The notes beneath the pieces were generated by a model, which ran no database searches, had not been told where the DNA came from, and saw only the letters and a list, made by a program, of their open reading frames with translations. From positions 248,001-312,000 of IMG/VR virus record IMGVR_UViG_3300032116_000004: a stretch of DNA of 64,000 nt; one strand, given 5' to 3'. The position numbers were made by a program, and so were the translations under genes. Shown piece after piece: positions 1-57,466 of the stretch. Position 1 is the stretch's first letter. Each line of letters opens with the position of its first letter.

Positions 1-804
1 CAGGGCATACCTATTCCCCCCTTGACTCCTAGAGATTGGCAAATCACCCTCGGACAAAAACTGCTACGTATGTTGTCAATACCCGAACTCGATGATGTTT
101 GTGATCTTTACAAAGATCAAGTGGTGAATCCTCACGACAATGATCAAAATTTAAATGATAATCAAAATTTCGATGAGAATTGCACGCTGAATGGTGCCAG
201 TGCCAGCTGCATAGTTCGGGTTGGCAGAGACATATTTTTTGACAATTCAGAATTTTTAAAACCAGAACAGAGTCGATGGATCGTTGAAAATCTACTAGGA
301 CCAGAATATCGTATACACGAAGCTGTCACTGATGGGCACGGGGATGCTGTGTTTGCCATCCTCAAACCTGGAGTTATATTAAGTAGCAAGCACGATAGCA
401 ATTTAGATTTCGGCAGAGATTTTCCCGGTTGGGAAGTGTGCAAGGTTTGGGATAGCTCAATTTGGGCAGCCATGGAGGTTGGCAAGTTCAAAGAAGATAA
501 CTTTAACGGCCGCTGGTATGTGCAAGGTCAAACACCCACCGAAGAATTCACGAAATTCGTAGATGAATATCTCAACAAATGGACGGGATTTGTGAGTGAA
601 ACAGTGTTTGATGTTAACTGTCTGGTGCTAGACGAATCACATGTAATCTTCTCGGCATACAACAAACCAGTATTTGATTTCTGTAAACAGCATAAAATTG
701 AACCTATCATCTCGGAATTGCGTCACAGCTATTTCTGGGATGGGGGTGTTAGCTGTTGCACACAAGACATCCGGCGACGCGGTGGCTTAGAGACTTATCT
801 CTAG
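1..804 (+). CDS. Amidinotransferase (pentein fold; glycine/inosamine-phosphate amidinotransferase-like), 5'-truncated by the window
   Basis: Frame is open from base 1. Pentein motifs HGDAVFAILKPGVIL, DVNCLVLDE and C-terminal GGVSCCTQDIRR (catalytic Cys region) are present. Confidence 0.75.
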   Translation, partial: QGIPIPPLTPRDWQITLGQKLLRMLSIPELDDVCDLYKDQVVNPHDNDQNLNDNQNFDENCTLNGASASCIVRVGRDIFFDNSEFLKPEQSRWIVENLLGPEYRIHEAVTDGHGDAVFAILKPGVILSSKHDSNLDFGRDFPGWEVCKVWDSSIWAAMEVGKFKEDNFNGRWYVQGQTPTEEFTKFVDEYLNKWTGFVSETVFDVNCLVLDESHVIFSAYNKPVFDFCKQHKIEPIISELRHSYFWDGGVSCCTQDIRRRGGLETYL

Positions 805-2288
805 TTGCAAACTTTTACACCGTATAGTTTTTCAAACCGATCAGCATCGTCTCTATCATTGACCATAGGCTCACCGCGTATGTTTAGACTGGTGTTAAGC
901 AACATAGGACATCCTGTTTCTACATACCAACGTTCTAACAGTTCTCGTATACCTGACCCACAGTCCTTGCTTACTGTTTGAACACGACTGGTCTTATCTA
1001 CATGTATGATAGCAGGAAAATGATCCGGATGGCGACAACGTGCTACCACTTGCATGTAAGGGCTACTGGTATATCCTTGGGGCATCTCAAAATAATCGTT
1101 GACACATTCTTCTAGTATCACAGGTGCAAACGGTCTAAACTGTTGTCTGCGTTTGATCGCATTGACTTTCTCCTTGATCTCGCTGCCTCTAGGGTCTGCA
1201 AGGAGGCTACGGTTTCCGAGTGCGCGGGGACCGAACTCAGCTCTGCCGGAGGCAACTCCCACAATCTGTTCATTAAGTAGCCGAGCCACAAGCTCATCAA
1301 CAGGATAAGGGCCAGGTATATTATACCCAAGATAAGGACTGGTCCAGTTAACTCTATGCCCATGAGCCAAAGCGGCAGCACCAAGGCTGCTACCAGCATC
1401 ACCAGGATTAGGCATGATCCAAATATTTTCATAGATGTCTCCAAGATTTCTATTGGCTAAACAGTTGAGAGCAACACCTCCCATGTATACAAGATTGGTT
1501 TCGCCTGTGAGTTCGCGAGCTTTTTTCATTACACTCATTATGAGATCTTCAGCCACTAACTGCGTAGCGCACGCAATATCTTCATTGGTAGCCGATTCTA
1601 AAAATGTTGAGTCAACTCCTATATGGAAGTTTTCATTGAGTTCAATGCTGTTGTAGTCTTTGATCACGCGATTGCTCAAGGCTTGGTACCACGTATCTCG
1701 ACCCCAGGCGGCCATGCCCATAGTAATGTATTCTTCGTCCATGGGTTTTAGTCCCACACGATCAGTCATGGCGCTGTAGAATAATCCAATTGAGTGTGGA
1801 TACATTTGGCGCCATAGTCTCTGGTATTGTGCCCGACCCTTGTTGTTGTAACATGCACGATAGATGCTAACAGTATCTAACTCACCAATGGCATCTATAA
1901 CAACAACTACTGCACGGTCAAATGGTGATGTTTGAAAACCTGCGGCTGCATGGCTGAGATGATGGCTGGTGCTGACTTCGTTACGAGCCGGATTTTGATA
2001 CCAAGACCCGAGATGCTTTTTCAATGCACCGCGTGTGGTCCAAGGGCCAAAGTTGCGTTGCCCAGAAAATATCTGCTGTATGTTGTGCATCCATGGATGT
2101 TCATAGAACGCCACTGTATCGTATTCCCACTCACACAGTTCTTTGAGCAGTCCAGGAGCAATAGTAGGATCGTTTTTCTTTTTACTATATCGTTCTGAGT
2201 GGCCGGCAAAAACTATTTCACCATCTGACCTGATGACAGTGGCTGCCGCATCATGGAACCCTGCACTGATACCAAGTATGTGTTTCAT
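801..2288 (-). CDS. O-carbamoyltransferase (NodU/CmcH/TobZ family)
   Basis: N-terminal ILGISAGFHDAAA...ERYSKKKND, HHLSHAA, DAIGE, GGVALNC, GDAGSSLGAA, EFGPRALGNRSLLADP, KRRQQFRPFAP and LLNTSLNIRGEPMV motifs. Confidence 0.93.
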   Translation of the reverse strand: MKHILGISAGFHDAAATVIRSDGEIVFAGHSERYSKKKNDPTIAPGLLKELCEWEYDTVAFYEHPWMHNIQQIFSGQRNFGPWTTRGALKKHLGSWYQNPARNEVSTSHHLSHAAAGFQTSPFDRAVVVVIDAIGELDTVSIYRACYNNKGRAQYQRLWRQMYPHSIGLFYSAMTDRVGLKPMDEEYITMGMAAWGRDTWYQALSNRVIKDYNSIELNENFHIGVDSTFLESATNEDIACATQLVAEDLIMSVMKKARELTGETNLVYMGGVALNCLANRNLGDIYENIWIMPNPGDAGSSLGAAALAHGHRVNWTSPYLGYNIPGPYPVDELVARLLNEQIVGVASGRAEFGPRALGNRSLLADPRGSEIKEKVNAIKRRQQFRPFAPVILEECVNDYFEMPQGYTSSPYMQVVARCRHPDHFPAIIHVDKTSRVQTVSKDCGSGIRELLERWYVETGCPMLLNTSLNIRGEPMVNDRDDADRFEKLYGVKVCN

Positions 2289-2386
2289 TTATAGATAAAC
2301 GGATCTCTTTTGCGTAACTCTTTTAGTTTTTTGCGATAGCGTATTTCAAGTTTGATCCGGTTGATCAAGTTTGTTAACCATTTCAT
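2285..2386 (-). CDS. Unannotated 33-aa basic peptide MKWLTNLINRIKLEIRYRKKLKELRKRDPFIYK
   Basis: Read by hand. AGGAGGA Shine-Dalgarno at 2397-2391, ATG at 2386, and its TGA overlaps the carbamoyltransferase ATG (ATGA coupling). Confidence 0.75.
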   Translation of the reverse strand: MKWLTNLINRIKLEIRYRKKLKELRKRDPFIYK

Positions 2387-3521
2387 TTTTTCCTCCTATG
2401 ATTTGTATCTGTCGAGTTTGATAATCAGGATCACTCCAGCAATAGTCATAGACACATTCGGCATCACTGGTTTTAACTCTGTAGACATCTAGATGAGTAT
2501 TTAAACGGCTCCATATGGATTGATAATCATTTGTCCAAAAGGTATCAATGAGATCCACTTGACCGATTTGCGGATGCCCAATAGTTAAACTTTTGTCATT
2601 GGGATCAAATCCATTCACTGTTAGCCATTCACGGAACTCTTGTAATCTTATCTTTTGCCATTCGTAGTTGCCAGGATTGTTAGCCCACTCTATATCAAAG
2701 TCTCCTGCTGCCTCAGTCTGGCTACGCATGGTAGTTGAAATTAACTCACCCACACGACTGTCACGTCCTTCATCCTGGAACACTTCCCAATGATGTTTGC
2801 CCACTGCTTTGTTCACACCTACAAATACTCCGCCTATGGGTCGATTGATAGTTTCTATACCAAACAGCTCGTAGTCTTTTTCGTCTAACACAAATCTTGG
2901 TGCATTAAGCCAACACATCAGTTGACTGGGCCTTTGCCAAGCGGGCGCTTCAATCTGTTTTCGATAACTGAGAGCCCAAGATTCAAATTCGTGACACAAT
3001 AAATTCAATTGCCGGATATGCCAGCGTGTGGCAGCATTAGCTTTTAGATAGTATTCTTTGGGAGAGCCGCTGACACCTTGTAAATCTTCAAAATATCTAT
3101 GCAACCAGTTGAACTTGTCATGTATGATATTGCGACCGGCTGCGCGACCATCTATAGGTGTATCTGTGATACAATTCGCCATATCAAAATAGTCGTCGAT
3201 GTGATAACCAAGATTGGCTTGATTGATTGCCGCTATACTGAGATTGACCTGCTCTAGTATATAGGAACCGTTGCGAGCATGATCGACAAACCCAAAGAAA
3301 CAATAGTTTTTTTCTAGATGATAATCTTTCCGCAATAGATCATTGAGTGCTGACAGCCATTTATGACTGAGAGAGTTATCATAGATGTCCACATATACTG
3401 GCAGTAGATCGCCAGTATGACGATTTTGTAGATCAATCTGCAATCTATCTAATATCTTGCCACCAATCATACATGTCCTGATTTTGTTGTAATATATGTG
3501 CCATGGTATATTGATCACCAC
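2346..3521 (-). CDS. Hypothetical protein in the modification operon (true start probably near 3470)
   Basis: Long ORF co-oriented with and overlapping its neighbours; no recognisable motif. Confidence 0.75.
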   Translation of the reverse strand: MVINIPWHIYYNKIRTCMIGGKILDRLQIDLQNRHTGDLLPVYVDIYDNSLSHKWLSALNDLLRKDYHLEKNYCFFGFVDHARNGSYILEQVNLSIAAINQANLGYHIDDYFDMANCITDTPIDGRAAGRNIIHDKFNWLHRYFEDLQGVSGSPKEYYLKANAATRWHIRQLNLLCHEFESWALSYRKQIEAPAWQRPSQLMCWLNAPRFVLDEKDYELFGIETINRPIGGVFVGVNKAVGKHHWEVFQDEGRDSRVGELISTTMRSQTEAAGDFDIEWANNPGNYEWQKIRLQEFREWLTVNGFDPNDKSLTIGHPQIGQVDLIDTFWTNDYQSIWSRLNTHLDVYRVKTSDAECVYDYCWSDPDYQTRQIQIIGGKNEMVNKLDQPDQT

Positions 3522-50595: not shown

Positions 50596-51612
50596 ATGAC
50601 CAATCTATTTAAAAAAGCCATAGTCTTCACTGACATCCATTTTGGACTGAAATCGAATAGCCTGTTGCACAATCAAGATTGCGAGCAGTTTGTAGATTGG
50701 ATCATCGCCCAGGGCAAGGAACACGGTTGCGAAACCGGCATGTTCTTGGGTGACTGGCATCACCATCGTGCGGCTATCAACTTACAAACACTGAACTTCA
50801 GTCTACAAGCATTGGAAAAACTAAGCAAAGCATTCTCTCAGTTCTTTTTTATTCCGGGCAATCACGATCTGTATTATCGCGACAAACGGGATATCCACGG
50901 TGCGGCCTGGGCCCGGCACTTGCCCAACATACATATCTGCAACGATTGGTTCCAAGAAGGTGATGTTGTCATTGCTCCTTGGTTGGTCGGAGACGAACAC
51001 CGACGCATCGAAAAATTGAATGCCAAATACATGTTTGGTCATTTTGAACTGCCACACTTCAAAATGAATGCCATGGTAGAAATGCCCGATCATGGAACCA
51101 TACAGGTAGATCATTTTGGACATATCGATCAAGTGTTTTCTGGTCACTTTCATCTTCGACAACACAAAAACAACATCAACTACATTGGCAATGCGTTTCC
51201 GCACAACTTTGCCGATGCTGGTGATGCCAATCGTGGCTGCATGATATTGGAGTGGGGCAAGCAACCCGAATATCATGCATGGCCCGAACAGCCCTTATAC
51301 AATGTCTGGGATCTCAGCCATGTCATTGACAACGCTGAACAAATCTTGAAGCCCAACATGCATGTGCGTGTGCAACTAGACATCGAAATATCCTATGAAG
51401 AAGCCACTTTCATCAAAGACACATTTATCGTCAAGCATGGCCTGCGAGAAATGGCCCTGATACCCAACAAGCGATCTGCCTTGGAAGAAGACATGGCTCC
51501 CGGAGATGTGAAATTTGAATCAGTGGATCAGATCGTCACAGATCAGATCACCAAGATAGAATCAGAGTTCTACGATCCTAAACTATTACTCCAAATATAT
51601 CAGGCGCTATGA
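50596..51612 (+). CDS. gp47: Recombination endonuclease, Mre11/SbcD-like (T4 gp47)
   Basis: FTDIHFG, FLGDWHH, PGNHD, FGHFEL and SGHFH phosphoesterase motifs. Confidence 0.92.
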   Translation: MTNLFKKAIVFTDIHFGLKSNSLLHNQDCEQFVDWIIAQGKEHGCETGMFLGDWHHHRAAINLQTLNFSLQALEKLSKAFSQFFFIPGNHDLYYRDKRDIHGAAWARHLPNIHICNDWFQEGDVVIAPWLVGDEHRRIEKLNAKYMFGHFELPHFKMNAMVEMPDHGTIQVDHFGHIDQVFSGHFHLRQHKNNINYIGNAFPHNFADAGDANRGCMILEWGKQPEYHAWPEQPLYNVWDLSHVIDNAEQILKPNMHVRVQLDIEISYEEATFIKDTFIVKHGLREMALIPNKRSALEEDMAPGDVKFESVDQIVTDQITKIESEFYDPKLLLQIYQAL

Positions 51613-53099
51613 TTATTTCCACCCTAGAGTTAGAACACCAACTAAAGTCAACCCACAACGTCAAAGTAATTCACGATCTTGGCAAGCTGTCAACCGGCCC
51701 CACGGAGTTGTTTAAGCTACTAGACAGTGTTTACCAAACTAGTTACGAGACAAACGATCGGTTGGTTTTTTACACTTCACATTTTATTCCTGAGAGTTTT
51801 CTACAGTTCTTTTACGAAACTATCAATTTTATAGATATCAGCAACTGGTTCATAATGATATGTGGGCCAAAAGAAATTGAGCACGACGTGTTGTCGTGTT
51901 GTAAAAAGTTTTCACTTGACTCTGTTCCAATTTGGTTCCACCCAGTTGAGTTAGACAAACAAACACACAAGATTGAAAACAACTTTAATTTACCCGATAC
52001 TATTTGTTCTATACCCTGGCACAACTTACAGATAACACAAAACGGAACTATTACTCCTTGTTGCATGAACAATCTTGATCTTGGTAACGTCAACCGTATC
52101 AAACTAGATCAAGCGTTCCATGACGAAAAACTACAAAAGTTAAGGGCTAGTTTATTGGCTGGAGAAAAACCAAAAGAGTGCGACAACTGCTGGAAAGTGG
52201 AAGAAAAAAATCTAACTTCTATTAGACTGCACAATGTCAAGCATTTAAAGAGAGAATTTTTAACCAAATATCTTGATCAACCAAGAGTAGCTACATTAGA
52301 TTTGAAGTTTAATAACACCTGTAATTTCAAATGCAGGATATGTAACGGTGGAAACAGCTCGTTGTTTGCCCTTGAAGATCAAAAGTTCCGCGGATCTAAG
52401 TTAGTTGTACAAGATGCTTGGGGGGAGAGTCAAGATTTTATTGATCAAGTTCTAACGTACTTGCCTGACATAAAAAATATTGACATGTTTGGCGGCGAGC
52501 CGTTTTTGATTAAACGTTTTAAATCGGTGTTGGAGATGGCAGTTGAAAAAGACTACGCCAAGGACATTAGATTACACTACAACAGCAACGGATCCATTTG
52601 GCCCAATCATTTGCTACCTGTTTGGCCTAGTTTTAAACTGGTAGACATACATTTTAGTATTGATGCTGTTGGTTCACATTTTGAACTACAAAGAGGCGGT
52701 CAGTGGTCTGAAGTTGAGGACAACATACTAAGGCTCAAAGATTTACAGTTACCCAACCTGTCTATTAGTATCATGCCCACTATCAGTGTCATGAGCGTTT
52801 ACTACATAGACCAAGTCTACGACTGGGCTTGCAAACATGGTTTTCCTATATTTGTTAACCATGTGCAAGGTGAAGGAATGGAGCTACAGGATCTTACAAA
52901 AGAAGCCAAAAAAATTATTATTGACAAGTTTCAAGATCACCCCTGGAATGAAATCCAAAATGTTATTAAGATAATACAAAATTTGCCTGACAGTGATGGC
53001 AAGAAGTTTCAATCTAAAATGCAATATTTTGATCAGGTTCGAAGTGAAAGTTTTTCAGCAAGTCACTCTGAGATTGCAAAAGCCATGAGATATATGTAA
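51609..53099 (+). CDS. Radical SAM protein with an extra N-terminal domain plus twitch-like domain
   Basis: CSIPW...PCC...CDNC, CNFKCRIC, GGEPF and YNSNG. Confidence 0.9.
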   Translation: MIISTLELEHQLKSTHNVKVIHDLGKLSTGPTELFKLLDSVYQTSYETNDRLVFYTSHFIPESFLQFFYETINFIDISNWFIMICGPKEIEHDVLSCCKKFSLDSVPIWFHPVELDKQTHKIENNFNLPDTICSIPWHNLQITQNGTITPCCMNNLDLGNVNRIKLDQAFHDEKLQKLRASLLAGEKPKECDNCWKVEEKNLTSIRLHNVKHLKREFLTKYLDQPRVATLDLKFNNTCNFKCRICNGGNSSLFALEDQKFRGSKLVVQDAWGESQDFIDQVLTYLPDIKNIDMFGGEPFLIKRFKSVLEMAVEKDYAKDIRLHYNSNGSIWPNHLLPVWPSFKLVDIHFSIDAVGSHFELQRGGQWSEVEDNILRLKDLQLPNLSISIMPTISVMSVYYIDQVYDWACKHGFPIFVNHVQGEGMELQDLTKEAKKIIIDKFQDHPWNEIQNVIKIIQNLPDSDGKKFQSKMQYFDQVRSESFSASHSEIAKAMRYM

Positions 53100-53108
53100 A
53101 ATATAAAA

Positions 53109-54872
53109 ATGATACAAATCAAAGACCTAACCGTTAAAAACTTTATGAGTGTGGGCAATGCCACACAAGCCATCAACTTTGATCGTCAAGACCTTACATT
53201 AGTTCTAGGTGAAAACTTAGATTTAGGCGGCGATGGCAGCCGTAACGGCACAGGTAAGACCACTATAATCAATGCACTGAGTTATGCGCTGTATGGTCAA
53301 GCTCTCACCAATATCCGACGCGACAATCTCATCAACAAAGCCAACAGCAAGAACATGTTGGTCAGTTTAGATTTCAACATCAATGGCCGCGACTACCGCA
53401 TCGAGCGTGGTCGCAAACCCAACATACTGAAATTCTACGTCAACAACGAAGAACAGGCAGCAGATGACAACTCGCAAGGCGACAGTCGAGAAACACAAGA
53501 TGCCATAGAGTCTGCCCTGGGCATGACTCACGACATGTTCCGACATGTGCTGGCGCTGAACACATACACAGAACCGTTTTTGAGCTTGAAGGCCAATGAT
53601 CAACGTGTGATCATAGAACAACTGTTGGGTATCACCCTTTTGAGTGAGCGTGCTGAGCGCATCAAAGAACTCAATAGAGAAACCAAAGATGCCATTGCTC
53701 AGGAAGAAATGCGTATCCGAGCTGTGCAAGAAGCCAACAAGCGTATAGAAGAACAGATCGAAAATCTGCGGCGTAGGCAAACAATGTGGAAGACCAAACA
53801 TGAGGAAGAGACAGATAAAATCCAAAAGGCCTTGGAAGAACTGCGAAAGATCGACATTGACGCAGAGATCCAAGCGCACAAGGACTACAAAATTTGGGAT
53901 CAGAAGCGCAAAGACATCAACGATCTTGCTGGACAAATATCCCGCACGAAACTTGATGTTGATCGCGAGACGAAAAACATTGGCAAACTTAGCAAAGAGA
54001 TTGCGACTCTTGAACAGCATACCTGTCATACATGCGGTCAAGCCTTCCACGACTCAAAGCACCAACAGGTACTGGCAAGCAAGCAGGAGGATTTGGCAAC
54101 AGCAAGAACGTCTTGCCAGGAGCATACACAAACGCTATCAGAAATGGAGGCTGCCCACACCTCCTTGGGCCAGTTAGGAAAACCTCCCAAGATGTTCTAT
54201 GATGCGGAAGAAGATGCCATACAACATCGTGCCAACGTAGACAACCTACAACAACAACTGGACATCAAGGCACAAGAAACAGATCCCTACGGTGAACAGA
54301 TCGAAGAGATGACAGGACAGGCCCTGCAAACAGTGACCTATGACACTCTCAACGAACTCACCCGCTTGCAAGAGCATCAAGACTTCCTGTTAAAACTCTT
54401 GACCAACAAAGACTCATTCATCCGCAAAAAGATTATTGAGCAGAATTTGAGTTATTTGAATGCTCGGTTGACATACTATCTTGATCGCATCGGCTTGCCA
54501 CATTCGGTAATATTCCAAAACGATCTCACTGTGGAAATACAAGAATTGGGACGAGATCTAGACTTTGACAATTTAAGTCGCGGAGAGCGCAATAGACTGA
54601 TCTTGTCAATGTCATGGGCCTTCCGTGATGTATGGGAATCATTGTATCATCCCATCAACGTGCTGTTCATCGACGAACTGGTAGATTCAGGCATGGACAC
54701 ACAGGGTGTGGAAAATTCGTTGGCCTTGCTGAAGAAGATGAGTCGTGAACGGCACAAGTCAATATGGTTAGTATCGCACAGAGACGAACTGGCTGGACGT
54801 GTTGAAAACATCCTGCGTGTGGTCAAAGAAAACGGCTTTACGTCATACAACACCGACATTGACATAGCATGA
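53109..54872 (+). CDS. gp46: Recombination ATPase, Rad50/SbcC-like (T4 gp46)
   Basis: Walker A NGTGKTT, coiled coil with CHTC zinc hook, LSRGE signature, Walker B LFIDE and VSH. Confidence 0.93.
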   Translation: MIQIKDLTVKNFMSVGNATQAINFDRQDLTLVLGENLDLGGDGSRNGTGKTTIINALSYALYGQALTNIRRDNLINKANSKNMLVSLDFNINGRDYRIERGRKPNILKFYVNNEEQAADDNSQGDSRETQDAIESALGMTHDMFRHVLALNTYTEPFLSLKANDQRVIIEQLLGITLLSERAERIKELNRETKDAIAQEEMRIRAVQEANKRIEEQIENLRRRQTMWKTKHEEETDKIQKALEELRKIDIDAEIQAHKDYKIWDQKRKDINDLAGQISRTKLDVDRETKNIGKLSKEIATLEQHTCHTCGQAFHDSKHQQVLASKQEDLATARTSCQEHTQTLSEMEAAHTSLGQLGKPPKMFYDAEEDAIQHRANVDNLQQQLDIKAQETDPYGEQIEEMTGQALQTVTYDTLNELTRLQEHQDFLLKLLTNKDSFIRKKIIEQNLSYLNARLTYYLDRIGLPHSVIFQNDLTVEIQELGRDLDFDNLSRGERNRLILSMSWAFRDVWESLYHPINVLFIDELVDSGMDTQGVENSLALLKKMSRERHKSIWLVSHRDELAGRVENILRVVKENGFTSYNTDIDIA

Positions 54873-55492
54873 CATCCCGGATCATACGAGTCACACCTAC
54901 CGAACAATACTTCAGCATCAATTGGCAATTGGCTGTGCGTTGCAACTATGATTGCATGTATTGTTCTCCCATGTGGCATGATGATCATAGCCAGCATCAT
55001 GATCTTGACACTATGAAACAGGCTTGGTTAAACATATTTGAAAAGACCAGCAAACAAAATCTACCCTATAAGATCGCATTTACCGGTGGAGAACTCACTT
55101 CAAACAAACACTTTCTACCGTTTGTCACTTGGTTGCGGAAGGAATATGATCAGCACATATTCAAATTGCTGGCTACCACCAATGGCAGCGCCAATCTCAA
55201 GTATTATCAGAAAATGTTCCAAGCGTTAGACAACATCGCATTCAGTGTGCATTCGGAACACATCAATGAAGAGAAATTTTTTGACATGATCATACAACTT
55301 AAGAAAAGTATCTCACCTGATAAATTCTTGCAGGTCGCTATCATGGATGAATACTGGAATCAAGATCGTATTCCGTTGTATATCAATCTGCTAGAACATC
55401 ACGACATCAGCTACACTGTGAACAAGATAGATTATTCCTATCAGACTCGCACCGTGCCCATATTCAAAGGAAAATTGAATCTTGGAATTTGA
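54869..55492 (+). CDS. Short radical SAM core protein (207 aa)
   Basis: CNYDCMYC, FTGGE, TTNGS and FSVHSE. Confidence 0.85.
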   Translation: MTSRIIRVTPTEQYFSINWQLAVRCNYDCMYCSPMWHDDHSQHHDLDTMKQAWLNIFEKTSKQNLPYKIAFTGGELTSNKHFLPFVTWLRKEYDQHIFKLLATTNGSANLKYYQKMFQALDNIAFSVHSEHINEEKFFDMIIQLKKSISPDKFLQVAIMDEYWNQDRIPLYINLLEHHDISYTVNKIDYSYQTRTVPIFKGKLNLGI

Positions 55493-55802
55493 AAATCATC
55501 AATACTATAACTGTGAAATAGAACTGTCAGATGGGAGATCGTTCAAGGTCAGTGCCAACTGGATGCACAATAACGATTTAGATCATTGGTCAGGATGGAG
55601 TTGCGATGCAGGTTATCGTCGATTGGATATAGACAAGGATTTCAACGTCTACAGCGCAGTTTGTCAAAACGATCGCTTGGGCAATCTTTTCAAAGAATGG
55701 AGCCCGTTTGATGCTCCCGGAATCTGTCGACGGAATCGATGCACAGGTTGTACCGACGATCTTTTGATTGGAAAACGTGATATTTCTATATCTGAGAAAT
55801 AA
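55482..55802 (+). CDS. Cys-rich twitch/SPASM-like Fe-S domain protein
   Basis: WSCDAG...AVC...GNL...CRRNRCTGCTDD; TTG start overlapping the upstream gene. Confidence 0.6.
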   Translation: MEFENHQYYNCEIELSDGRSFKVSANWMHNNDLDHWSGWSCDAGYRRLDIDKDFNVYSAVCQNDRLGNLFKEWSPFDAPGICRRNRCTGCTDDLLIGKRDISISEK

Positions 55803-55819
55803 TTGATAATTATGTGCTC

Positions 55820-56260
55820 ATGTCATGGCTTTTCGAATCCCGAGAAATCACAGAGTTACCCGAAACGTGTGTCGGGTTTGTTTATTTGATCACCAATAAA
55901 CTTACCGGCCGGCAGTATATTGGCAAAAAATTAGCAAAGTTCAAGAAAACAACATATCGAGTAGTCAAACTCAAAAATGGCAAAAAGAAACGCAAAAAAA
56001 TCAGAGGCGCGATAGATTCAGATTGGCAGACATATTATGGCAGTTCTCCGGAGTTATCTCGAGATGTTGAACTGCTAGGCACCGAAAACTTCTCACGTGA
56101 AATACTGTATTACTGCCAATCCAAATCGGAATGCAGTTACATAGAGGCTCGCGAACAATTCTCCCGACGTGTATTAGAAAGTGATGACTATTACAACGGA
56201 CACATACAGGTCCGTGTGCATGGCAGTCACATCAAAGGCAAACTAAGCAGTCAAGGCTAG
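55820..56260 (+). CDS. GIY-YIG endonuclease (Seg/DenA-like, single domain)
   Basis: GFVYLITN...YIGKK (GIY-YIG variant), YYGSS, REIL, E...YYN; Lys/Arg-rich insertion KKTTYRVVKLKNGKKKRKKIR. Confidence 0.88.
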   Translation: MSWLFESREITELPETCVGFVYLITNKLTGRQYIGKKLAKFKKTTYRVVKLKNGKKKRKKIRGAIDSDWQTYYGSSPELSRDVELLGTENFSREILYYCQSKSECSYIEAREQFSRRVLESDDYYNGHIQVRVHGSHIKGKLSSQG

Positions 56261-56610
56261 CACAGGCCAATGTCGTGTGCCCTAGACCTGGATCCAGGAT
56301 CACAGGGATGGAAGACTCACCGCGCTAGTGAGCACTCAATCAGTATCCTTGACAGGACCACGATCGCAAACACCTGCGGTTTGATTGTTTGAATAGAATA
56401 TAAAGGGAAAAAGACGTGCTAGTGATAGCACACGTCAGCATGATATGATAGCGTATGTCGTGTTGGCCGCCGTTGTAATAAAGACGGAGCTCGAGGTATC
56501 GGACAACCGCCTCTGTAATGCTCTAACGCTGTGTGACTGAGTCGACTCGGATGATGACACCTCTTTGCCCTGGGCGGGCAAAGTGTGACCAAACAATCTG
56601 GATGATAACT
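56257..56610 (+). ncRNA. Candidate large structured non-coding RNA
   Basis: ORF-free interval with at least 8 hairpins, a GUGA (GNRA) tetraloop, GU-rich stems favouring the + strand, a perfect 9-bp long-range helix (56383-91/56590-98) and a 7-bp loop pairing (56448-54/56526-32). Confidence 0.7.
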
Positions 56611-56683
56611 GTTATCTCGCTTCGCTCGATTATGTAATCAATTCATGAGCGACAGCGAATGAATAGACTTGCGTAGCAAGTCT
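56604..56683. repeat. Cluster of short palindromes/REP-like inverted element between convergent transcripts
   Basis: GATAAC-T-GTTATC; TCGCTTCGCTC pairs with GAGCGACAGCGA around GATTA-TG-TAATC; AGACTTGC-GTA-GCAAGTCT. Confidence 0.6.
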
Positions 56684-56693
56684 CAATTGGATG

Positions 56694-57029
56694 TTAGAAC
56701 TGATCAGGCCAATCACGGAACAGTGCGTGCTGGATGTTGCCCGAAACAAACTGATTGAAACTTTTGTGTTTTTCTTCGAGTTCGCCTTCCAATGGCGCCA
56801 CACGACGAAATGCTGAGTCCATCTGTGCCATGTCTTTAAACTCCATGATGATCATCCATTCGGGCATGTCTGCGATTGAACGGAATCCCATCTTGCAACG
56901 GGTTATCCTATAACTCATCATCTTGCCCTCAGACATCAGGTGCTCAAAAAAACTTCGCATTCCTGTGACCCAATCAAGGTCTGAGATATCACCTTCTTTG
57001 TCTGCCCATATCGTGTATAAGTCGCTCAT
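56694..57029 (-). CDS. Small alpha/beta-barrel-like protein (DUF6614-like)
   Basis: YTIWAD...YRITRCKMGF...EWMIIMEF...QMDSAF...HALFRDWPD; family recognised from memory. Confidence 0.5.
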   Translation of the reverse strand: MSDLYTIWADKEGDISDLDWVTGMRSFFEHLMSEGKMMSYRITRCKMGFRSIADMPEWMIIMEFKDMAQMDSAFRRVAPLEGELEEKHKSFNQFVSGNIQHALFRDWPDQF

Positions 57030-57466
57030 GTCATTGGTCCTAGTATTTCAAATCCTTCTATCTCTTTTTTGTAAAGATGTGCCTGCTCGAGATAGAGATA
57101 ATCAAAGCCCCTTGCTTTGTATATGGCACATTCTGTTTTCATGGTTTCAATGCCCAATCTTGATTGCGGATCATGATATGTCCATGCAAATTGATCACAG
57201 AGAGCATTTTTGTCGTCATACCTTCGTATGAGACTGAATGCTACCATGCGTTCTTGATCAAAATATCCAATGACGTCAGTCATTGGATCGGTATATCGGC
57301 TTCGAAACATGGGTATCACACTACTGAAATGCTTATAGATACAGTAAGTTCTATAGATATTGTCAAGTTCCACCATTTGCTGTTCGGTAGGTATGAGATA
57401 TCCCCACTGGGCTGATGCTTGATAATTGGTTTTTGCTAGATTGATACGGGCAAATTGATAGGTCAT
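57026..57466 (-). CDS. GNAT-fold protein resembling the C-terminal domain of arginyl/aminoacyl-tRNA-protein transferases (ATE/Bpt)
   Basis: ERMVAFSLI...AWTYHDPQSRLGIETMKTECAIYKARGFDYLYL parallels the ATE_C pattern xLVAV...Y.P...SLG.......A...G..YLYLG. Confidence 0.5.
   Translation of the reverse strand: MTYQFARINLAKTNYQASAQWGYLIPTEQQMVELDNIYRTYCIYKHFSSVIPMFRSRYTDPMTDVIGYFDQERMVAFSLIRRYDDKNALCDQFAWTYHDPQSRLGIETMKTECAIYKARGFDYLYLEQAHLYKKEIEGFEILGPMT

What the first reader, a model, noticed from the sequence alone, without database searches (positions are those of the whole stretch)
56257..56610. Candidate large, pseudoknotted non-coding RNA directly downstream of the GIY-YIG nuclease
Seen: this is the only long ORF-free interval in an otherwise gene-packed window, and it is almost wholly pairable on the + strand. 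Hairpins: GCACA/TGTGC (56260-64/56276-80); palindrome CCTGGATCCAGG (56287-98); CAGGGAT/ATCCTTG (56303-09/56345-51) enclosing CTCAC/GTGAG; GACGT-GCTA[GTGA]TAGC-AC-ACGTC (56413-36, GNRA loop); a 12-bp stem with four G-U pairs (56436-47/56454-65); CCGT/ACGG; nested GAGC-GAGG-CGG[ACAA]CCG-CCTC-GCTC (56487-523); CTGAG/CTCGG; CTTTGCCC/GGGCAAAG. Long-range pairings: perfect GATTGTTTG/CAAACAATC (56383-91/56590-98), loop ATAGCGT with ACGCTGT (56448-54/56526-32, pseudoknot), and loop GGCCAAT with GTTGGCC (56265-71/56462-68). I find no tRNA, tmRNA, RNase P or intron core. Inference: it is a large ornate RNA (ROOL/GOLLD-like class or new), possibly acting as an RNP with the upstream nuclease, whose Lys/Arg-rich insertion could bind RNA. 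That would parallel nuclease-plus-RNA pairs such as HEARO/OMEGA.
Basis: partly seen in the sequence, partly recalled or inferred. Interest (0 to 1): 0.85.

Follow-up and report, generated by a model that had tools for sequence, protein, structure and literature searches.

The report
Known Polynucleobacter-1 RNA, longer than catalogued
The gene-free stretch is a real, heavily folded non-coding RNA, but it belongs to the Polynucleobacter-1 family described in 2010; it is about 430 bases long, three times its Rfam model, its function is unknown, and it is not tied to the neighbouring nuclease.

Summary
Window 56255-56390 (+) matches Rfam RF01718, Polynucleobacter-1 RNA, at 113 bits against a threshold of 37.

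New here:
- A further covarying 3' part (56533-56683), so the RNA fills the whole 433-nt intergenic gap.
- A likely second pseudoknot.
- About 40 copies in contigs of one lineage of freshwater T4-like phages.
- At least 120 bacterial-type copies in freshwater metagenome contigs, including Polynucleobacter and Limnohabitans genomes.

Covariation is strong: 97-98% of cells paired, against 31-54% in slid controls. G-U pairs outnumber A-C 200 to 16, which places the RNA on the + strand.

The nuclease link is synteny only. Homologous GIY-YIG genes in cultured phages have no such RNA. The bacterial copies instead sit between a divergent DUF6641 gene (78 of 79 loci) and a small tyrosine recombinase.

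Verdict: new member of a known family, with an extended structure and new context; the biochemical function remains unknown.

The parts
56255..56390 (+). 5' domain, equal to the Rfam Polynucleobacter-1 model (RF01718): three hairpins followed by a closed multi-stem unit
   Evidence: cmscan gives 113.1 bits (gathering score 37), E 9e-24, model positions 1-141 of 141. Compensatory changes are seen in its helices.
56260..56280 (+). Hairpin P1, 56260-64/56276-80, with the conserved loop GGCYAAY
   Evidence: 99% of cells paired, 5 of 5 pairs changed on both sides, intact in 33 of 34.
56287..56306 (+). Hairpin P2, 56287-93/56299-306, with A56302 bulged. It is followed by the invariant single-stranded string CACAGGGAUGGAA.
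   Evidence: pairs 58-64 with 72-79. Invariant columns are listed.
56316..56332 (+). Hairpin P3, 56316-20/56328-32 (CUCAC/GUGAG)
   Evidence: 98% paired, 5 of 5 pairs with changes on both sides.
56337..56387 (+). Closing helix 56337-42/56382-87, enclosing two hairpins (CC/GG at 56347-56, and 56362-67/56376-81)
Evidence: 98% paired, 4 of 6 pairs covary, intact in 33 of 34.
56413..56436 (+). Hairpin Ha, with a GNRA or A-rich loop. Part of the 'tail' of the 2010 alignment.
   Evidence: All three modelled pairs covary (GC, UA, AU, CG) (helix 1). Present in the consensus structure line (SS_cons) of Weinberg 2010.
56436..56465 (+). Hairpin Hb, a 12-bp stem (56436-47/56454-65) with four G-U pairs. 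Its 7-nt loop forms pseudoknot 1.
   Evidence: The inner 8 pairs show 4-6 pair types each. Present in the 2010 consensus structure line.
56448..56532 (+). Pseudoknot 1: 56448-54 (AUAGCGU) pairs with 56526-32 (ACGCUGU)
   Evidence: 7 of 7 pairs changed on both sides and 100% of cells paired (helix 2). Bacterial-type RNAs keep the pairing with other letters (CCACUU/AAGUGG, GCACUU/AAGUGC): 68 of 83, against 10 of 83 after shuffling. It is the pseudoknot line (SS_cons_1) of the 2010 alignment.
56472..56507 (+). Candidate pseudoknot 2: 56472-75(76) GUUG(A) pairs with 56504-07 (56503) CAAC, in the loop of the inner hairpin
   Evidence: No unpaired cell in the two varying pairs: U-A 23 / C-G 7, and G-C 28 / A-U 2. 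Bacterial-type RNAs have GUUUC/GAAAC at the same place, a compensatory change. It competes with two nearly invariant G-C pairs (helix 6).
56486..56524 (+). Nested helices 56486-90/56520-24 and 56493-97/56509-13, with the invariant string AACCGCC. Some relatives carry a variable inserted hairpin near 56518.
   Evidence: helices 4 and 5: 5 pairs with changes on both sides. The insertions are visible in L066, L103, L069 and L031.
56531..56559 (+). Repeat unit A: GUGUGAC, 7 variable nt, then ACUCGGAUGAUG
   Evidence: Alignments. Its 8-nt core changes together with that of unit B.
56563..56583 (+). Hairpin He: CUUUGCCC/GGGCAAAG
   Evidence: 99% paired, 4 of 8 pairs with changes on both sides (helix 2).
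56583..56609 (+). Repeat unit B: GUGUGAC, 6 variable nt, then AUCUGGAUGAUA
56617..56628 (+). Small variable hairpin with a UUC/UAC loop. It is weak in the window itself.
   Evidence: Stems differ among relatives (CAUC/GAUG, CUUUC/GAAAG, CAC/GUG) in the alignment. Not counted formally.
56641..56664 (+). Hairpin HP1: stem AUUCA/UGAAU around a conserved UGA-GC[GNNA]GC-GAA core (tandem G-A internal loop)
   Evidence: helices 3 and 4: 6 of 6 pairs with changes on both sides. The same motif is present in the Polynucleobacter-type RNA at L146:1726-1749.
56665..56683 (+). Hairpin HP2 (AGACUUGC/GCAAGUCU), the probable 3' end of the RNA
   Evidence: helix 5: 7 of 7 pairs with changes on both sides. In relatives whose next gene is on the + strand, a T4-type late-promoter string TATAAATA follows directly.
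55814..56260 (+). Upstream gene: a 148-aa protein consisting of a GIY-YIG domain only. It is a syntenic neighbour, not shown to be a partner.
   Evidence: Pfam SegE_GIY-YIG, E 1e-32. phrog_447, E 2e-37. 66-96% identical homologues precede the RNA in about 40 phage loci.
56694..57029 (-). Convergent downstream gene (DUF6614). It bounds the RNA gene.
   Evidence: Pfam PF20319, E 1e-21. The same neighbour occurs in 9 related loci.

Best explanation
Shown.
- The interval encodes a full-length member of the Polynucleobacter-1 RNA family, read from the + strand.
- The RNA is about 430 nt long (about 56255-56683), not the 141 nt of the Rfam model. It consists of the Rfam 5' domain; a middle part with two hairpins, a nested helix, one firmly supported pseudoknot and a second likely one; and a newly delimited 3' part with one hairpin flanked by two copies of a ~28-nt unit, followed by three terminal hairpins.
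- Homologous RNAs of about 500 nt lie in chromosomes of freshwater Burkholderiales (Polynucleobacter, Limnohabitans). There the RNA region is a separate conserved block between a divergent DUF6641 gene and, usually, a small tyrosine recombinase.

Inferred.
- The RNA is a self-contained, trans-acting structured RNA. It is not a guide or partner of the GIY-YIG nuclease, and not a leader of the next gene.
- In the phage it is probably made as the 3' end of the rightward transcript that includes the GIY-YIG gene, and ends at HP2.
- The most likely mode of action, held with low confidence (about 0.3), is a protein-binding scaffold or host-RNA mimic. The phage copy would stand in for, or compete with, the host's own RNA during infection. 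The two repeat units, which always change together, would form two equivalent binding sites for one partner.
For: - Family: Rfam hit of 113 bits, full length.
- Prior description: tail, pseudoknot and upstream gene family are already in Weinberg 2010.
- Extent: conservation covers the whole gap, in register, in 33 distinct phage loci.
- Structure: model-based alignments give 98.4% paired cells with 15 of 25 pairs changed on both sides, and 97.1% with 17 of 27. Slid controls give 31-54%, and 0 of 500 shuffles reach the observed covariation score or percentage paired.
- Strand: G-U 200 against A-C 16.
- Non-coding: indel lengths modulo 3 are 320, 77 and 45 for remainders 1, 2 and 0.
- Bacterial homologues: they were retrieved with a 3'-domain pattern, and all six tested have the Rfam 5' domain. 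The phage-built 3' model finds five of the six tested metagenome loci at E 2e-5 to 4e-4. Their conservation block is discrete, about 500 nt.
- Independence from the nuclease.
- Downstream gene families vary or are convergent.
- Contigs of relatives occur in freshwater metatranscriptomes.
- Repeat cores are identical in 83 of 97 distinct RNAs, although the core differs between lineages.
Against: - No experiment or transcript ends are available. The metatranscriptome contigs are at low depth and could include DNA.
- No promoter for the RNA was found in the phage.
- All phage loci belong to one syntenic lineage, so co-inheritance inflates the counts.
- The scaffold or mimic role is pure inference. 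No partner was identified: DUF6641 has no structural match and nothing hit defence-system models.
- The near-constant adjacency to the GIY-YIG gene in phages (about 40 loci, spacing -20 to +6) leaves room for a lineage-specific functional link.
Confidence: 0.7

Rival explanations
1. The RNA is the partner or guide of the upstream GIY-YIG nuclease, forming an RNP as HEARO/omega RNAs do with IscB or TnpB.
For: The gene and the RNA are adjacent with constant spacing in about 40 phage loci. The protein is a bare catalytic domain with a basic loop that is 5-9 residues longer than in homologues without the RNA.
Against: - The family is common in cultured T4-like phages (496 records). The three checked (Melnitz, ACP17, C48C1) have 0-148 nt after the gene and no Rfam hit.
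- L024 and L082 have genes inserted between the two.
- Bacterial RNAs have no GIY-YIG neighbour, and the phage loci have no DUF6641 or recombinase.
- All phage loci share synteny, so adjacency is not independent evidence.
- No hypervariable guide-like segment or element ends were seen.
Confidence: 0.07
2. It is a cis-acting element of an mRNA: either a stabilising or terminating 3' UTR of the GIY-YIG message, or a leader or riboswitch for the downstream gene. The 2010 table scored 'cis-regulatory: y'.
For: It follows a gene directly and lies between convergent genes in the window. The last hairpin could act as a terminator. The 2010 classification is.
Against: - About 430 nt with 12 or more covarying helices and pseudoknots is far more than a terminator needs.
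- Downstream genes differ between loci or are on the other strand. In many loci a late-promoter string lies between the RNA and the next gene.
- In bacteria the conserved block is separated by about 120-165 nt from a divergent gene, and by about 380 nt of unconserved sequence from the recombinase.
Confidence: 0.1
3. It is a ribozyme, with self-cleaving or other catalytic activity.
For: It has invariant unpaired strings in junctions and loops (CACAGGGAUGGAA, AACCGCC, UGAC, GAU) and pseudoknots, as large ribozymes do.
Against: No match to any Rfam ribozyme, even at E up to 10. There is no conserved processing context. Nothing here tests catalysis.
Confidence: 0.1
4. It is a DNA-level element, for example a recombination or attachment site for the neighbouring tyrosine recombinase, or an origin of transfer or replication. 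The 'structure' would then be single-stranded DNA hairpins or protein-binding repeats.
For: A tyrosine recombinase lies downstream in 53 of 69 bacterial loci. There are direct repeats that evolve in concert. An island-like variable region follows the recombinase in P. paneuropaeus.
Against: - The strand asymmetry (G-U 200 against A-C 16) and the pseudoknots point to RNA.
- The phage copies have no recombinase.
- The orientation is fixed in all loci, so there is no inversion.
- No att-like copy of the 3' end was found within 11 kb.
Confidence: 0.03

Closest known systems
Polynucleobacter-1 RNA motif (Rfam RF01718; Weinberg et al. 2010, Genome Biol 11:R31, PMC2864571)
   Same: Full-length match to the model. 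The same tail hairpins and the same 7-bp pseudoknot as in the authors' alignment. The same upstream gene family (GOS11034 / PSSM2_218-like). The same freshwater setting. Function unknown in both.
   Different: - The Rfam model covers only 136 nt here, and the 2010 'actual motif' ends near 56532. This work adds about 150 covarying nt (He, two repeat units, HP1, HP2) and a candidate second pseudoknot.
- In 2010 16 examples were known and none came from a phage. Here there are about 40 viral contigs and at least 120 bacterial-type contigs.
- The bacterial gene neighbourhood is new.
ROOL and GOLLD large RNAs
   Same: Large, ornate, non-coding RNAs of unknown function that occur in phages or prophages and in bacteria.
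   Different: No Rfam match. No tRNA genes nearby. Smaller, at about 430 nt. Nothing is known about multimer formation.
HEARO / omega RNAs of IscB and TnpB (OMEGA systems)
   Same: A structured RNA of a few hundred nt lying next to a small nuclease gene.
   Different: The nuclease is of the GIY-YIG type. The RNA and the protein occur without each other. No transposon ends and no guide segment are present. No Rfam match.
Host-derived RNAs carried by phages (tRNA, tmRNA) and the pseudo-ToxI antitoxin RNA mimic (comparison from general knowledge)
   Same: Phage and host both carry homologous structured RNAs, which suggests substitution for, or interference with, a host function.
   Different: No sequence or structural relation. 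The mimic role here is only an inference.

Membership tests
Polynucleobacter-1 RNA (RF01718) | Score at or above the family's gathering threshold over the whole covariance model | tested here: met
   113.1 bits against 37, model positions 1-141 of 141, E 9e-24.
Polynucleobacter-1 RNA (RF01718) | Helices of the 5' domain kept through compensatory changes | tested here: met
   P1, P3, the closing helix and the inner hairpin all covary.
Polynucleobacter-1 RNA (RF01718) | 'Tail' of the authors' alignment: two hairpins, a nested helix, and a 7-bp pseudoknot formed by the loop of the long hairpin | tested here: met
   compared with the two consensus structure lines (SS_cons, SS_cons_1) of the 2010 Stockholm file.
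Polynucleobacter-1 RNA (RF01718) | Location downstream of a GOS11034 / PSSM2_218-like gene, in freshwater samples | tested here: met
   The upstream gene belongs to phrog_447, which has 400+ cyanophage homologues. The runs that hold the window are freshwater or lake metagenomes. The 2010 text is.
ROOL / GOLLD | Match to the family covariance models; frequent neighbourhood of tRNA genes | tested here: not met
   No hit, even at E up to 10. No tRNA in 64 kb.
HEARO / OMEGA guide RNA | Obligate co-occurrence with its nuclease (IscB, IsrB or TnpB); a variable guide next to a conserved scaffold; transposon ends | tested here: not met
   The nuclease is GIY-YIG. The RNA and the protein family occur apart. 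No Rfam match.
Group I intron carrying a GIY-YIG homing endonuclease | Intron core (Rfam RF00028) and a split host gene on the same strand | tested here: not met
   No Intron_gpI hit in the window. The next gene is on the opposite strand.
Riboswitch / 5' leader | One consistent gene family directly downstream on the same strand | tested here: not met
   At least 8 different downstream families or convergent genes were found.

The most novel reading that the evidence does not exclude
In freshwater Burkholderiales the RNA works together with its fixed neighbours. These are the DUF6641 protein and a tyrosine recombinase of only about 188 residues, a catalytic domain with no DNA-binding N-terminal domain. 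They could act as an RNA-dependent recombination or island-control module. The T4-like phages would then carry a copy of the RNA to hijack or block that module during infection.
Probability: 0.07. Interest if true: 0.85.

Novelty: new member of a known kind. Interest (0 to 1): 0.42.

Why it matters
Polynucleobacter-1 has sat in Rfam since 2010 as a 141-nt 'sRNA' with 16 examples and no follow-up literature that I could find.

This work shows three things:
- It is really a 430-500 nt RNA with multiple pseudoknots.
- It is shared between abundant freshwater bacteria and a lineage of their probable T4-like phages.
- In bacteria it has a near-invariant protein neighbour (DUF6641) and a frequent small recombinase.

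That places it among the large bacterial RNAs of unknown function, such as OLE, GOLLD, ROOL and raiA. It also makes it testable, because Polynucleobacter strains can be cultured. For the scan itself, the lesson is that the finding is a rediscovery, and the nuclease-RNP idea does not hold.

Tried and rejected
- blastn ('distant' mode) of the whole gap against 50,697 phage genomes: no match. No cultured phage carries a close copy.
- Genome scan with a 21-nt 5' pattern: only one hit, a Limnohabitans MAG.
- Sequence and profile searches of the GIY-YIG protein against the PDB: nothing. A relation to T4 endonuclease II therefore stays a positional analogy from memory: the homologue follows nrdA/nrdB in Melnitz and C48C1.
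- Defence-system (PADLOC) models on the bacterial neighbours: no hits.
- DUF6641: the AlphaFold model (pLDDT 79) has no Foldseek match in the PDB at E below 0.5. The protein atlas gave only a sub-threshold MobI lead, score 0.49.
- Search for an att-like repeat of the RNA's 3' end in the P. paneuropaeus island: none within 11 kb.
- Reads: only contigs of relatives at low depth, so no transcript ends.
- The helix between the two repeat units predicted by RNAalifold has no pair changed on both sides (four of six pairs never vary) and is not possible in bacterial-type RNAs. I treat it as unproven.
- CsrA-site and C/D-box (kink-turn) readings of the GGAUGAUG repeats were rejected, because many relatives have AGAUAAUG or AGCGAAAG instead.
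- mafft-qinsi was not usable.
- Model R1 missed the divergent L013 and L121.

Full report
**The observation.** The interval between the stop of the + strand gene at 56260 and the stop of the - strand gene at 56694 is the only long ORF-free gap in the window. There are no tRNA or tmRNA genes in the 64 kb. Folded alone, the 356-nt stretch is only marginally better than shuffles: z = -1.94 on the + strand and -1.41 on the - strand. The sequence by itself would therefore not carry the claim.

**Identity.** A scan of the whole window against Rfam gives one hit at gathering level: RF01718, Polynucleobacter-1 RNA, at 56255-56390 (+). It scores 113.1 bits against a threshold of 37 and covers the full model. 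A permissive scan of 55700-57100 finds nothing else.

The only paper in the library that names the family is Weinberg et al. 2010.
- Its supplementary text says the motif occurs in environmental samples and in Polynucleobacter sp. QLW-P1DMWA-1.
- It says the 3' half is not always detected.
- It says most examples lie downstream of genes of family GOS11034, which has possible homology to PSSM2_218 of cyanophage P-SSM2.
- It says none was found in a sequenced purified phage.

The authors' Stockholm file shows that their 'search motif' is the 5' domain, which became the Rfam model. Their 'actual motif' also has a tail with two hairpins, a nested helix and a 7-bp pseudoknot formed by the loop of the long hairpin. 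That corresponds to window 56255-56532. Most of the finding is therefore a rediscovery.

**Relatives and extent.** A 14-mer from the invariant core retrieved 120 viral contigs, of which about 40 carry true copies.
- The 300 nt after the Rfam domain are conserved in register in nearly all of them.
- In an alignment of 34 distinct sequences, conservation runs from about 56235 to about 56685.
- Indels are mostly not multiples of three: 320, 77 and 45 for lengths with remainder 1, 2 and 0 modulo 3. This argues against coding.

**Structure.** RNAalifold and my own column scan found compensatory changes in most helices. I built two covariance models, one for 56402-56538 and one for 56530-56686, and re-aligned all loci to them.

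| Model | Region | Cells paired | Pairs changed on both sides | Slid controls | Shuffles reaching observed covariation score or % paired |
|---|---|---|---|---|---|
| First | 56402-56538 | 98.4% | 15 of 25 | 33-53% | 0 of 500 |
| Second | 56530-56686 | 97.1% | 17 of 27 | 32-54% | 0 of 500 |

- The pseudoknot 56448-54/56526-32 has all 7 pairs covarying and no broken cell.
- The 12-bp hairpin whose loop forms that pseudoknot also covaries. Both helices are therefore real. The loop would then have no spare bases, so the top of the stem may open or the two may alternate.
- A second loop-to-strand pairing, 56472-75 with 56504-07, shows clean compensatory changes within phages.
- That pairing also shows a compensatory switch to GUUUC/GAAAC in bacterial-type RNAs. 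I regard it as a likely second pseudoknot, absent from the 2010 drawing.
- New 3' elements are the hairpin 56563-83, a small variable hairpin, HP1 (56641-64, with a conserved UGA...GAA internal loop) and HP2 (56665-83).
- In the supported helices G-U pairs outnumber A-C 200 to 16, so the RNA is read from the + strand.

These fail:
- the palindrome;
- CAGGGAT/ATCCTTG;
- CCGT/ACGG;
- CTGAG/CTCGG;
- the GGCCAAT/GTTGGCC pairing;
- above all the perfect 9-bp GATTGTTTG/CAAACAATC.

The 9-bp pairing is intact in only 9 of 34 sequences. It also competes with a local helix that covaries and is intact in 33 of 34.

**An unexplained feature.** The 3' part contains two copies of a ~28-nt unit (GUGUGAC, 6-7 variable bases, then AYUCRG plus a purine-rich core), at 56531-59 and 56583-609.
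- Their cores are not complementary, yet they change together: GGAUGAUG, GGAUAAUG and GGAUGAAG in phages; AGCGAAAG, AUCGAAAG, AUCAAAAG and AGAGAAAG in bacteria.
- The first seven bases of the core are the same in both copies in 83 of 97 distinct RNAs.
- Two equivalent sites for one partner would explain this. So would gene conversion.

**Context in phages.** The window is from an uncultured T4-like myovirus: it has a gp46-like SbcC protein, a T4-type baseplate hub and radical SAM genes.
- In about 40 loci the RNA follows a 141-152 aa protein that is a bare GIY-YIG domain, 66-96% identical to the window's. That gene ends 20 nt before to 6 nt after the RNA start.
- All these loci share synteny, so this is one lineage.
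- L024 and L082 have one and two genes inserted between the two.
- The protein belongs to phrog_447, which has homologues in 496 cultured phages, mostly cyanophages.
- In Melnitz (50% identity), ACP17 and C48C1 the gene is followed by 0-148 nt and there is no Rfam hit.
It is only 5-9 residues longer here.
- Downstream genes vary or are convergent. In many loci a T4 late-promoter string, TATAAATA, follows HP2.

**Context in bacteria.** The genome scan gave one hit in a Limnohabitans MAG, among ordinary chromosomal genes. A pattern taken from its 3' domain and from the Polynucleobacter flank printed in the 2010 file retrieved at least 120 freshwater metagenome contigs of 37-57% G+C.
- All six that were tested have the Rfam 5' domain.
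- The phage-built 3' model finds the 3' domain of five of those six at E 2e-5 to 4e-4. A Polynucleobacter paneuropaeus genome locus scores more weakly, at E 0.03.
- The conserved block is discrete, about 500 nt, and includes HP1 and HP2.
- A DUF6641 gene lies upstream and divergent in 78 of 79 loci.
- A tyrosine recombinase of about 188 aa, catalytic domain only, lies downstream on the same strand in 53 of 69 loci, and in 41 of 47 loci where at least 3.5 kb is available.
- These proteins diverge to 41-55% identity while the arrangement is kept.
- In the P. paneuropaeus genome the recombinase is followed by island-like genes, including a methylase and a second integrase.
- The window and the RNA-bearing phage loci encode neither DUF6641 nor the recombinase.

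**Expression.** Freshwater metatranscriptome assemblies contain contigs of relatives that cover the GIY-YIG gene and the RNA. Depth is low, no ends can be defined, and DNA carry-over cannot be excluded.

**Interpretation.** The element is a stand-alone structured RNA of the Polynucleobacter-1 family. The nuclease-RNP idea is not supported, because RNA and protein occur apart in both directions. A leader or riboswitch role does not fit the variable or convergent downstream genes. A DNA-level role does not fit the strand asymmetry and the pseudoknots. What the RNA does is unknown. I favour a protein-binding scaffold or host-RNA mimic, at low confidence. The bacterial module with DUF6641 and the truncated recombinase is the most interesting lead. 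Attempts to name DUF6641 by structure, defence-system models or the literature gave nothing.

Noticed in passing
L125-L245 (for example L146:691-2701; L245:7933-10567): Bacterial-type Polynucleobacter-1 RNAs sit in a conserved module. A divergent DUF6641 gene lies upstream in 78 of 79 loci, often with a ~127-aa gene beyond it. A ~188-aa tyrosine recombinase that is only a catalytic domain lies downstream in 53 of 69 loci. In P. paneuropaeus, island-like variable genes follow.
   Followed up: partly
window 56531-56559 and 56583-56609: Two direct copies of a ~28-nt unit. Their purine-rich 8-nt cores change together across phage and bacterial lineages: the first seven bases are the same in both copies in 83 of 97 RNAs. 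The cores are not complementary to each other. No explanation so far.
   Followed up: partly
window 56239-56243, and the same place in related loci: The string AAGGC about 15-20 nt before the RNA is conserved. It lies in different reading frames at the end of the GIY-YIG gene (K-G in the window, F-K-A in L004), and it is also present in L082, where another gene precedes the RNA. It may therefore belong to the RNA or to its processing site.
   Followed up: no
Related loci such as L004, L017, L021, L030, directly after HP2: A T4-type late-promoter string, TATAAATA, follows the last hairpin wherever the next gene is on the + strand. This marks the 3' limit of the RNA and confirms the T4-like nature of these phages.
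   Followed up: no
window 51609-53099 and 54869-55492; L082:5112-6488: The phage carries two radical SAM proteins, one with a SPASM domain, just upstream of the GIY-YIG gene. A relative has a B12-binding radical SAM gene inserted between the GIY-YIG gene and the RNA.
   Followed up: no
L122 (Melnitz) 1-3438; L124 (C48C1) 1-3414: In cultured relatives the GIY-YIG homologue, often mis-named 'NAD synthetase', follows the ribonucleotide reductase genes nrdA/nrdB. From memory, this is the position of T4 denA (endonuclease II). Neither a sequence nor a profile search of the PDB could confirm a relation.
   Followed up: partly
L066, L103, L069, L031, at the place of window ~56518: Some phage copies carry a 25-45 nt extra hairpin inside the nested helix. 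This is a variable expansion site, which bacterial copies also use.
   Followed up: no
L126:345-567: A group I intron (Rfam RF00028, 60 bits) lies on a contig that carries a bacterial-type RNA, about 8.5 kb from that RNA.
   Followed up: no
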